A stretch of 63,961 nt of DNA, filler included, from Octopus bimaculoides (lineage: Eukaryota): the NCBI RefSeq assembly GCF_001194135.2. It is 7 parts of 7 records of this genome, joined end to end, with 100 filler letters (N's around TTAATTAATTAA, not from the genome) between each part and the next. Parts side by side here need not be neighbours in the genome. Positions count along the whole stretch, not along the records: positions 46,506 to 48,672 come from NC_068987.1; 6 more parts are not named here. One strand, 5' to 3'. A model generated the notes under the pieces. The model was not told where the DNA came from and searched no databases. It saw only the letters and a program-made list of their open reading frames with translations. The translations under genes were made by a program, and so were the position numbers. Numbering within the stretch: the first letter of the stretch is position 1; each line of letters opens with the position of its first letter. This document shows, piece after piece, positions 46,916 to 47,701 of this stretch.

Positions 46916-47701
46916 TTACTGAATTTCCCTTATATTACTTTCCCAGATGCATTGTTCTCTAAACTTATTGTTTATTTTACGAACTCTTATATATCCATTT
47001 GACTTACTTATGTCCTTCAGCTCCTCAAAACTTGGAATATTAAGCCGTTTTAGATTTTTGAGGAAATCCTCGCCATTGGTATGATGGTTTTCCCGACCTT
47101 TGAATAAAACCTCAAGCCTCTTGCGCCAGTCAAACCTATCTACAATTCCTTGTTCCTCATCAGTTTTGTGGCAAGGATACTTCTGATTGATTATGTAGAA
47201 GTAATCCTCAACTCCTAAGCAACGCGCGACATCTTGAGGTGGATAGTTATTTTCTTCACAAACCTCTCCAATATGTAAAATCATTTCGTTTGTAATTTGA
47301 AAGGTGTCCTGGTACAGTTCCCATTGACAGAAAGTTTTTTCGCGAATTTGGTGGTCATGTTTTTCTGTGTTAACAACTTCCAATTTCTCCCAACAATCGA
47401 GGAAATGTCTTATGCTAGTTTCTTCTTTTTCCCAGTACTTGCAAGGTTCGAGCCTTCTCTTGATTTCTTCCCAGATATCTTTATCTGAACATTTACCGCG
47501 GGTATCGATGAAAGCAGTGAAGATTAAATAAGGTATAATAGGGACTATATCAGGGCAGAGAAAGAACTCTTCAATAGTCTTGATTGCAAGAAAATCCAAA
47601 CCAAGTTGGATTGAGACTCTAACGAAACTCTTAGGGTCAGACAGTTTCTGAGACATTTCATTTACCTTTTCATAAGTAAACATACAACGATTGCATCCCA
47701 T
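46916..47701 (-). CDS. Single-exon 261-aa protein resembling tandem death-fold domains (putative innate-immunity/apoptosis adaptor)
   Basis: Uninterrupted, non-repetitive 786-nt ORF. It is preceded by a polypyrimidine acceptor ttttctttttaag| at 47704 and a ccATGg context. Two ~90-aa helical repeats carry death-domain-like motifs 'FTYEKVNEMSQKL..FVRVSIQLGL..I' and 'ITNEMILHIGE..PQDVARCLGV..I....P.....Q...DW'. The gene call is strong; the domain call is by eye only. Confidence 0.75.
   Translation of the reverse strand: MGCNRCMFTYEKVNEMSQKLSDPKSFVRVSIQLGLDFLAIKTIEEFFLCPDIVPIIPYLIFTAFIDTRGKCSDKDIWEEIKRRLEPCKYWEKEETSIRHFLDCWEKLEVVNTEKHDHQIREKTFCQWELYQDTFQITNEMILHIGEVCEENNYPPQDVARCLGVEDYFYIINQKYPCHKTDEEQGIVDRFDWRKRLEVLFKGRENHHTNGEDFLKNLKRLNIPSFEELKDISKSNGYIRVRKINNKFREQCIWESNIREIQ

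What the first reader, a model, noticed from the sequence alone, without database searches (positions are those of the whole stretch)
46916..47701. Intronless gene encoding an apparent tandem death-fold (DD-DD) protein in a repeat-dominated region
Seen: the only long non-repetitive ORF in 64 kb (261 aa), preceded by an acceptor and ccATGg. Its two halves share a helical pattern with 'LG' cores (SIQLGL; ARCLGV) and a downstream Trp/aromatic residue. Established: death-domain superfamily adaptors (MyD88, Tube, FADD, Imd, CRADD) nucleate immune and apoptotic signalosomes, and lophotrochozoans have lineage-specific expansions of them. Inference: a divergent DD-only adaptor or decoy that may bridge or poison two death-domain filaments. 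I cannot match it to a named gene.
Basis: partly seen in the sequence, partly recalled or inferred. Interest (0 to 1): 0.75.

Follow-up and report, generated by a model that had tools for sequence, protein, structure and literature searches.

The report
Octopod orphan gene, death-domain-like N-terminus
This is a real, single-exon, fast-evolving gene found only in octopuses; its front half probably folds like a death domain (a protein-docking module of immune and cell-death signalling), while the claimed second death domain in the back half could not be shown.

Summary
The 261-aa ORF sits at 46916-47701 on the minus strand, with a gccATGg start and an in-frame TAA two codons upstream. It is a genuine coding gene. 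It is intact and collinear in O. vulgaris, O. sinensis (LOC118764210, uncharacterized), a third octopod and Argonauta hians. Neutral simulations keep the frame open in only 0.01-0.06% of trials, and internal indels are multiples of 3. No relative exists outside octopods among 5.8 billion proteins, and no sequence-library hit (Pfam, PDB sequences) names a fold. Amino-acid change is near neutral on average (dN/dS 0.66-1.6), but about 50 positions are invariant out to Argonauta.

Death-fold test: the N-terminal block (about residues 7-105) aligns in the canonical register to a profile of nine validated death domains. That alignment beats 299/300 shuffles but scores below any true held-out DD. An AlphaFold model (pLDDT 59) gives FADD, TNFR1, ankyrin-G and DR3 death domains as its best structural matches, none significant (E>1). 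The C-terminal block shows no death-fold signal. The two halves are not detectably related to each other.

Verdict: an octopod-restricted, uncharacterized helical protein with a probable divergent DD-like N-domain. "Tandem DD-DD" is unproven and the immune role is speculative. Interest is modest.

The parts
46916..47701 (-). Single-exon CDS, 261 aa plus TAA stop; orthologue of O. sinensis LOC118764210 (XP_036360574.1), O. vulgaris CAI9725488.1 and Argonauta hians GAB1609508.1
   Evidence: frame preservation and indel phase
47696..47707 (-). Start context TAA GCC ATG GGA: in-frame stop two codons upstream, Kozak-like gccATGg. The AG just upstream is not conserved in O. vulgaris
47387..47683 (-). 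N-terminal module, residues ~7-105: six predicted helices (10-17, 23-32, 36-46, 50-67, 73-89, 97-103); probable divergent death-domain-like bundle. Invariant motifs: LGL (33-35), IKT.E (40-44), AF..TRG..SDK (63-74), RL (83-84)
47300..47386 (-). Variable linker, residues ~106-134, low model confidence. Most differences between O. sinensis and O. vulgaris fall here, and Argonauta has much longer low-complexity insertions in this region. Contains invariant H115 and H117 and, at its end, F124/C125/W127/E128 (FC.WE)
47006..47299 (-). C-terminal module, residues ~135-232: helices 138-151, 155-162, 165-174, (179-183), 189-205, 210-219, 225-232. It has the lowest dN/dS of the four segments in all three pairs tested (0.46-0.63 against the third species). 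DEEQGIVDR.DWRKRLEVLFKGRE is nearly invariant within the octopus species (two conservative differences). No detectable similarity to death-fold profiles or to the N-module
46919..47005 (-). C-terminal tail, residues ~233-261: basic stretch IR(V/I)RKINNKFRE predicted as a terminal helix at low confidence; the end of the protein differs between species (2-nt indel near the stop)
48087..48153 (.). Upstream non-coding block, 85% identical in all three species over 67 nt, ~390-450 nt 5' of the ATG. Contains the perfect palindrome CTTCCGGAAG. Candidate promoter or 5'UTR element (inferred)
46614..46679 (.). Downstream non-coding block, 85% three-way identity over 66 nt, ~240-300 nt 3' of the stop. Candidate 3'UTR element (inferred). 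Bracketed by a 40-nt inverted repeat (46549-46588 / 46703-46742)

Best explanation
A genuine, single-exon, octopod-restricted protein-coding gene for a soluble, all-helical, non-enzymatic two-module protein. The N-terminal module (~residues 7-105) is most likely a highly divergent death-domain-like six-helix bundle. The C-terminal module (~135-232) is a second, better conserved helical bundle of unresolved affinity, followed by a basic tail. The proposed mechanism is inferred, not shown: the protein acts through protein-protein docking as an adaptor or regulator, with the DD-like module engaging other death-fold proteins. A conserved hydrophobic/Gly core holds the fold while surface residues turn over at close to the neutral rate.
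For: Real gene: the ORF is intact and collinear in the window species, O. vulgaris, O. sinensis, a third octopod and Argonauta. P(frame stays open under neutrality) is 5.5e-4 and 1e-4, and ORF indels are in phase. About 50 positions are invariant at 29% overall identity to Argonauta. Lineage restriction: an exhaustive HMM search of 1.84 billion representatives and two word-indexed searches of 5.8 billion proteins return only octopod proteins. DD-like N-module: hhalign to nine Pfam-validated DDs is in the canonical register, with LGL on the H2-H3 turn, I40/I43 on H3, F64 at the H4 Trp position and SD..I..I..RL on H5. The template-free AF2 model has six helices with matching boundaries and pLDDT 60-85. 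Death domains take Foldseek ranks 1, 2, 5 and 7, with the best prob (0.41), TM (0.43-0.60) and RMSD (3.9-6.0 A) in the list. No catalytic or other domain matches in Pfam or PDB. By direct reading of the sequence there is no N-terminal hydrophobic signal and no TM-like stretch.
Against: No death-fold match is statistically significant on its own: Foldseek E 1.6-9.2, hhalign P 0.012 and probability 3.6%, and no Pfam Death hit at E <= 10. The N-block score is below the weakest held-out true DD. Foldseek output does not say which part of the query aligned, so assigning the structural matches to the N-module is inferred. dN/dS is about 1 on average, and the ORF is not better conserved than its flanks against O. 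vulgaris (83% vs 87-89%). Expression was not tested. No partner is known.
Confidence: 0.45

Rival explanations
1. Tandem death-fold (DD-DD) adaptor or decoy. Both modules would be death-fold domains, and the protein would bridge or cap two death-domain assemblies in innate immune or apoptotic signalling.
For: There is an N-module DD signal. The C-module has a DD-compatible helix count and lengths (14-8-10-loop-17-10-8) and an ARCLG(V/I) turn motif at the H2-H3 position. The profile test cannot reject it, since true CARD/PYD/DED domains score only 10-16.5.
Against: The C-module is at the shuffle median in three test designs. The halves show no detectable homology. No Pfam or PDB sequence hit was found. 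Nothing here bears on immune function.
Confidence: 0.2
2. Octopod-specific orphan helical protein unrelated to the death-fold superfamily. On this view the DD resemblance is the generic similarity of small helical bundles plus a chance LG-turn motif, and function is unknown beyond protein binding.
For: All death-fold evidence is sub-threshold. The model is medium confidence from a 4-sequence MSA. No relative exists outside Octopoda. Evolution is fast and near neutral, as is typical of young lineage-restricted genes.
Against: Two independent methods converge on the same family and the same register. Foldseek's best matches are specifically death domains rather than assorted helical bundles. The shuffle controls reach the N-block score only about 0.3-0.8% of the time.
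Confidence: 0.28
3. Non-functional or decaying ORF (a spurious gene model, or a relic of a transposon or virus) that happens to be open.
For: dN/dS confidence intervals include 1 in five of six pairs. The ORF is no better conserved than its flanks against O. vulgaris. The gene is unannotated in the window's source, since the exact protein is absent from the collection. Transposons lie nearby in O. vulgaris.
Against: The frame is preserved in five species including Argonauta, with P <= 5.5e-4 per pair, and indels are in phase. Motifs are invariant at 29% identity. No transposon, phage or viral match was found by sequence or fold. No extra copies occur within +/-10 kb in three genomes' loci.
Confidence: 0.07

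Closest known systems
Death domain (Pfam PF00531, clan CL0041), e.g. FADD, TNFR1, ankyrin-G and DR3 death domains
   Same: The N-module has about 95 residues and six helices with matching boundaries. It shows the LG turn after helix 2, a conserved Ile in helix 3, an aromatic at the helix-4 Trp position and an amphipathic helix 5. Its best structural matches and its only above-shuffle profile alignment are to DDs.
   Different: There is no significant sequence or fold score. The helix-2 Trp is replaced by a variable hydrophobic residue (F/L/I/M), and 'AT' at the start of helix 5 is 'SD'. Pfam does not recognise it. It is attached not to a kinase, TIR, DED or CARD but to an unrelated helical module.
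Small DD-containing adaptors (MyD88, FADD, CRADD/RAIDD, Tube, Imd)
   Same: It is a small, soluble, non-enzymatic two-module protein in which one module is, or resembles, a DD. This similarity is one of architecture only.
   Different: The second module is not TIR, DED or CARD (no Pfam hit). There is no orthology: the family is confined to octopods. Assembly behaviour is untested.
O. sinensis LOC118764210 (XP_036360574.1), O. vulgaris CAI9725488.1 and Argonauta hians GAB1609508.1, all 'uncharacterized/hypothetical'
   Same: These are true orthologues: 67% identity to O. vulgaris and 29-35% to Argonauta, collinear flanks in O. vulgaris, single-exon CDS and the same two-module layout. O. sinensis falls in the same 90%-identity cluster as O. 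vulgaris.
   Different: Argonauta has a poly-Gln/Asp N-terminus, much longer low-complexity insertions between the modules and a longer tail (423 aa). None has any functional annotation.

Membership tests
Death-fold superfamily (Pfam clan CL0041): N-terminal module | Significant match to a curated death-fold profile (Death, CARD, DED, PYRIN and relatives) | tested here: not met
   hmmscan against Pfam-A at E <= 10 gives no death-fold family for the window protein or the orthologues P0001-P0003. PDB sequence-profile searches give no death-fold chain.
Death-fold superfamily (Pfam clan CL0041): N-terminal module | Profile-profile similarity to death domains in the canonical helix register | tested here: inconclusive
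It is below held-out true DDs (26.8-90.6) but above true CARD/PYD/DED against the same profile (10-16.5).
Death-fold superfamily (Pfam clan CL0041): N-terminal module | Six-helix antiparallel (Greek-key) bundle of ~80-100 residues | tested here: inconclusive
   The AF2 model (pLDDT 58.8; N-block 60-85) has six helices. Foldseek ranks 1, 2, 5, 7 and 44 are FADD, TNFR1, ankyrin-G, TNFR1 and DR3 death domains, with TM on target 0.43-0.60 for the first four (0.13 for the MBP-tagged DR3 chain). But E is 1.6-9.2 and the aligned query range is not reported.
Death-fold superfamily (Pfam clan CL0041): C-terminal module | Any sequence-profile similarity to death-fold domains | tested here: not met
   hhalign scores 11.7 / 11.9 / 2.0 are reached by 78/300, 22/150 and 60/120 shuffles. 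There is no match to single CARD, PYD or DED sequences, and no Pfam or PDB hit. The test has low power, so the fold itself is not excluded.
Tandem DD-DD architecture (internal duplication) | The two halves are homologous to each other | tested here: not met
   hhalign of N-block vs C-block: probability 0.15-0.2%, P 0.31-0.39, with only 8 columns (the LG stretch) aligned.
Death-fold adaptors (functional definition) | Homotypic oligomerisation through type I/II/III interfaces with other death-fold proteins; role in immune or apoptotic signalling | not testable with these tools
   This needs binding or assembly assays and expression data. No paper mentions the locus.
Transposon- or virus-derived ORF | Similarity to transposase, RT, integrase or viral proteins, or multiple dispersed copies | tested here: not met
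   Only single-copy octopod orthologues were found. No paralogue lies within +/-10 kb in O. vulgaris or Argonauta. BFVD fold search shows nothing (best E 0.46, prob 0.08).

The most novel reading that the evidence does not exclude
An octopod-specific, rapidly diversifying death-fold-only protein whose DD-like N-module, and possibly a cryptic second death fold in the C-module, caps or bridges Myddosome/PIDDosome-type helical assemblies. That would make it a lineage-restricted regulator of innate immune or apoptotic signalling, evolving under host-pathogen conflict. In support, dN exceeds dS between the window species and O. vulgaris (omega 1.43, 94.5% of bootstraps above 1; N-block omega 2.5).
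Probability: 0.1. Interest if true: 0.6.

Novelty: new member of a known kind. Interest (0 to 1): 0.35.

Why it matters
If the N-module is a true death domain, this would be a death-fold family that curated profiles miss. It would be confined to octopods and evolving at almost the neutral rate, which suggests that counts of cephalopod death-fold genes based on Pfam are underestimates. It would also give a small, tractable candidate regulator of octopus innate immunity or apoptosis. If it is not a death domain, it is one more lineage-restricted orphan gene of unknown function, which is common in octopus genomes. In either case the gene is already present as an uncharacterized model in O. sinensis and O. 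vulgaris, and appears unannotated in the window's source.

Tried and rejected
(1) Pfam on the window protein and three orthologues at E <= 10 gave only noise such as TRPM_tetra, DUF4247 and Rubrerythrin, all far below their cut-offs.

(2) PDB sequence searches with the single protein and with N- and C-block profiles returned only designed repeat proteins, de novo TIM barrels and a BBS9/PTHB1 stretch (E 0.33; 'ITNE.IL' similarity). I judged these to be chance.

(3) The first AF2 model, from a 3-sequence MSA, had pLDDT 38, and its Foldseek hits were meaningless.

(4) The BFVD viral fold search found nothing, so a viral origin is rejected.

(5) An apparent 'second copy' in the O. vulgaris locus was my misreading: the file held two records, and the rows belonged to the third-species contig L002.

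(6) An apparent synteny block between the O. vulgaris and Argonauta loci turned out to be a shared non-LTR retrotransposon.

(7) The Argonauta model is flagged partial, but its ORF ends three codons later, so it has no extra domain.

(8) The 82-84-aa upstream gene model annotated in O. vulgaris and O. sinensis has ACG instead of its ATG in the window, so I did not treat it as part of the feature.

(9) N-terminal myristoylation/palmitoylation (MGC...) is rejected because Gly2 is not conserved (MAN.., MTS..).

(10) Rfam on both strands matched only the TA repeat, below threshold.

(11) Literature searches for the locus, accession and run identifiers gave no papers. A search on death domains in octopus and cephalopods gave nothing specific to this gene.

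Full report
OBSERVATION. The piece (window 46506-48672) contains one long ORF, 46916..47701 on the minus strand, encoding 261 aa. Read directly from the sequence, the start is TAA GCC ATG GGA. This gives a Kozak-like gccATGg with an in-frame stop two codons upstream, so the ATG is the first possible start. The piece is otherwise free of repeats apart from a (TA)13 and an A-rich run.

IS IT A GENE? Searches of 5.8 billion clustered proteins and an exhaustive HMM scan of 1.84 billion representatives found only octopod relatives:
- O. vulgaris CAI9725488.1 ('hypothetical predicted protein', 258 aa, 67% identity).
- O. sinensis XP_036360574.1 ('uncharacterized protein LOC118764210 isoform X1', 259 aa), which sits in the same 90% cluster.
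- An unnamed 2,081-bp Logan contig from a third species (63% identity; its true ATG is at L002 856).
- Argonauta hians GAB1609508.1 (29-35% identity).

The window's exact protein is not in the collection, so it seems unannotated in its source genome. In every species the CDS is one uninterrupted exon. The 'partial' Argonauta model simply ends three codons later.

The whole piece is collinear with the O. vulgaris locus. Strikingly, the ORF (83% identity) is no better conserved than its flanks (87-89%). Nei-Gojobori dN/dS values are as follows:
- Window species vs O. vulgaris: 1.43 (bootstrap CI 0.93-2.36).
- Window species vs O. sinensis: 1.19.
- O. vulgaris vs O. sinensis: 1.58.
- All three octopus species vs the third species: 0.66-0.83.

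Even so, the frame is clearly maintained. Applying the observed number of substitutions with the flank mutation spectrum leaves the ORF open in only 0.055% (O. vulgaris) and 0.01% (third species) of simulations. Indels inside the ORF are multiples of three, except for one 2-nt change just before the stop. In the flanks only 3/18 and 5/22 indels are multiples of three. About 50 positions are invariant out to Argonauta at 29% overall identity. So this is a real, fast-evolving, octopod-restricted coding gene. No paralogue lies within +/-10 kb in the O. vulgaris or Argonauta loci.

IS IT A DEATH-FOLD PROTEIN? Curated profiles say nothing. There is no Pfam family of any kind above noise, and no Death/CARD/DED/PYRIN hit at E <= 10, for the window protein or the three orthologues scanned. 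PDB sequence-profile searches give no death-fold chain.

For a more sensitive test I wrote ten human death-fold sequences from memory and validated them against Pfam. All hit Death, CARD, DED or PYRIN, nine above the gathering threshold with E-values from 2e-7 to 1e-24; the IRAK4 DD was marginal (E 1.9e-4, 22.0 bits against a 22.6-bit cut-off). I aligned the nine death domains and ran hhalign against separate N-block and C-block alignments of the octopod family.

The N-block aligns over 69 columns in the canonical register. LGL falls on the helix 2-3 turn, I40/I43 on helix 3, F64 at the helix-4 Trp position, and SDK..I..I..RL on helix 5. The score is 18.1 with P 0.012. Only 1 of 300 column shuffles reaches it. 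A forced global alignment spans 82 columns in the same register and is reached by 1/120 shuffles.

Calibration matters here. Held-out true DDs score 26.8-90.6, so the N-block is below any real DD. Genuine CARD, PYD and DED domains score only 10-16.5 against the same profile, so the test is blind to divergent death folds. The C-block is at the shuffle level in every design (78/300, 22/150, 60/120). The two blocks are not detectably related to each other (probability 0.15-0.2%).

STRUCTURE. AlphaFold2 with the 3-sequence alignment was useless (pLDDT 38), and its Foldseek matches were random. Adding the divergent Argonauta sequence raised mean pLDDT to 58.8 and pTM to 0.48, with the N-block at 60-85. 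The model has six helices in residues 10-103, a low-confidence linker, six to seven helices in residues 138-232, and a terminal helix.

Foldseek against PDB then placed death domains at the following ranks:
- Rank 1: FADD DD.
- Rank 2: TNFR1 DD.
- Rank 5: ankyrin-G DD (TM 0.60 on the target, RMSD 3.9 A, 106 columns).
- Rank 7: TNFR1 DD filament.
- Rank 44: DR3 DD.

The four top-ranked death domains are the matches with the highest probabilities and lowest RMSDs among domain-length alignments in the list, while the other entries are long, poor superpositions; the MBP-tagged DR3 chain at rank 44 is weaker (prob 0.09). But no match is significant (E 1.6-9.2, prob <= 0.41), and the tool does not report which part of the query aligned. 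Assigning the matches to the N-module rests on its higher confidence and the hhalign result, so it is inferred. The BFVD viral library gave nothing.

INTERPRETATION. Two independent, template-free lines of evidence converge on a death-domain-like N-terminal module, but both are sub-threshold. I put this at roughly even odds or slightly better. The C-terminal module is the more conserved half (lowest dN/dS of the four segments in every pair; the stretch DEEQGIVDR.DWRKRLEVLFKGRE is nearly unchanged within the octopus species). Its helix pattern is compatible with a death fold, but there is no positive evidence for one. The claimed internal repeat is not supported. The protein has no recognisable catalytic, signal-peptide or membrane features by direct reading of the sequence. 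The most plausible mode of action is therefore protein-protein docking as an adaptor or regulator, which is inference. A role in immunity or apoptosis is conjecture. The high dN/dS is compatible with either relaxed constraint on surfaces or diversifying selection. Only the N-block comparison with O. vulgaris (omega 2.5 from 4.5 synonymous vs 42.5 non-synonymous differences) hints at diversifying selection.

SURROUNDINGS. The putative splice acceptor before the ATG is not conserved in O. vulgaris. Three non-coding blocks are about 85% identical across all three species, although synonymous divergence to the third species is about 0.39. They lie at 48087-48153 (with the palindrome CTTCCGGAAG), 48237-48287 and 46614-46679. 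They are candidate promoter or UTR elements of this transcription unit. No AATAAA or ATTAAA occurs in the 410 nt after the stop. A 40-nt inverted repeat brackets the 3' block; folded as RNA it has z = -2.9, but its 3' arm is degraded in the third species.

VERDICT. The N-half is probably DD-like; the DD-DD architecture and the immune decoy function are not shown. The gene is an octopod-restricted, already-catalogued but uncharacterized locus. It is of modest interest unless deeper alignments and per-domain structures confirm a cryptic death-fold family.

Noticed in passing
window 48087-48153 and 48237-48287: Two upstream non-coding blocks (67 and 51 nt) are ~85% identical in all three octopod species, although synonymous divergence to the third species is ~0.39. 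The first contains the perfect 10-bp palindrome CTTCCGGAAG (ETS-core-like CCGGAAG). Possibly a core promoter or 5'UTR element.
   Followed up: partly
window 46614-46679: A 66-nt block ~240-300 nt downstream of the stop is ~85% identical in three species, the best-conserved part of the 3' flank. Candidate 3'UTR regulatory element.
   Followed up: partly
window 46549-46588 / 46703-46742: A 40-nt inverted repeat (73% complementary; the core 16 nt are 94%) brackets the conserved 3' block. The RNA fold gives -48.1 kcal/mol, z = -2.9. Both arms are present in O. vulgaris, but the 3' arm is degraded in the third species. It could be a MITE-like element or a lineage-specific stem.
   Followed up: partly
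window ~46765-46908: A ~145-nt segment immediately after the stop codon is present in the window species and O. vulgaris but absent from the third species: an insertion in the Octopus lineage or a deletion in the other.
   Followed up: no
window 46506-46915: There is no canonical poly(A) signal (AATAAA/ATTAAA) on the coding strand in the 410 nt after the stop. The 3'UTR either extends beyond the piece or uses a variant signal.
   Followed up: no
L001 9121-9897 and L004 9121-12717; window ~48490-48551: The O. vulgaris and O. sinensis annotations carry an 82-84-aa multi-exon model starting 880 nt upstream on the same strand (MLSIHSQHPQ..., donor GAG|GTAAGA). In O. sinensis it spans the whole ORF. 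Its ATG is ACG in the window, so the small ORF is not conserved, though a spliced non-coding 5' exon remains possible.
   Followed up: partly
window ORF residues 6, 115, 117, 125 (window 47684-47686, 47357-47359, 47351-47353, 47327-47329): Cys6, His115, His117 and Cys125 are invariant in all four aligned orthologues, including Argonauta, where His117 and Cys125 are separated by a ~40-residue low-complexity insert. This may be a metal-binding set linking the N-terminus, linker and C-module. Untested.
   Followed up: no
O. sinensis vs O. vulgaris proteins, residues ~100-115: At ~98.5% DNA identity the two proteins differ mainly in a cluster in the inter-module linker (…EKWETWESMANINV… vs …ENWRTWEDKVKTYPNE…), which suggests compensating indels or very relaxed constraint there.
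   Followed up: no
L001 460-3334 (-) and 17391-19190 (-); L003 13333-16179 (-): Retrotransposon ORFs flank the orthologous loci: LTR-type protease/RT/RNase H/integrase and non-LTR RT. The apparent O. vulgaris-Argonauta 'synteny' block is just a shared non-LTR element family.
   Followed up: yes
window 48478-48504: A (TA)13.5 microsatellite. It accounts for all the sub-threshold Rfam miRNA-like matches in the piece.
   Followed up: yes
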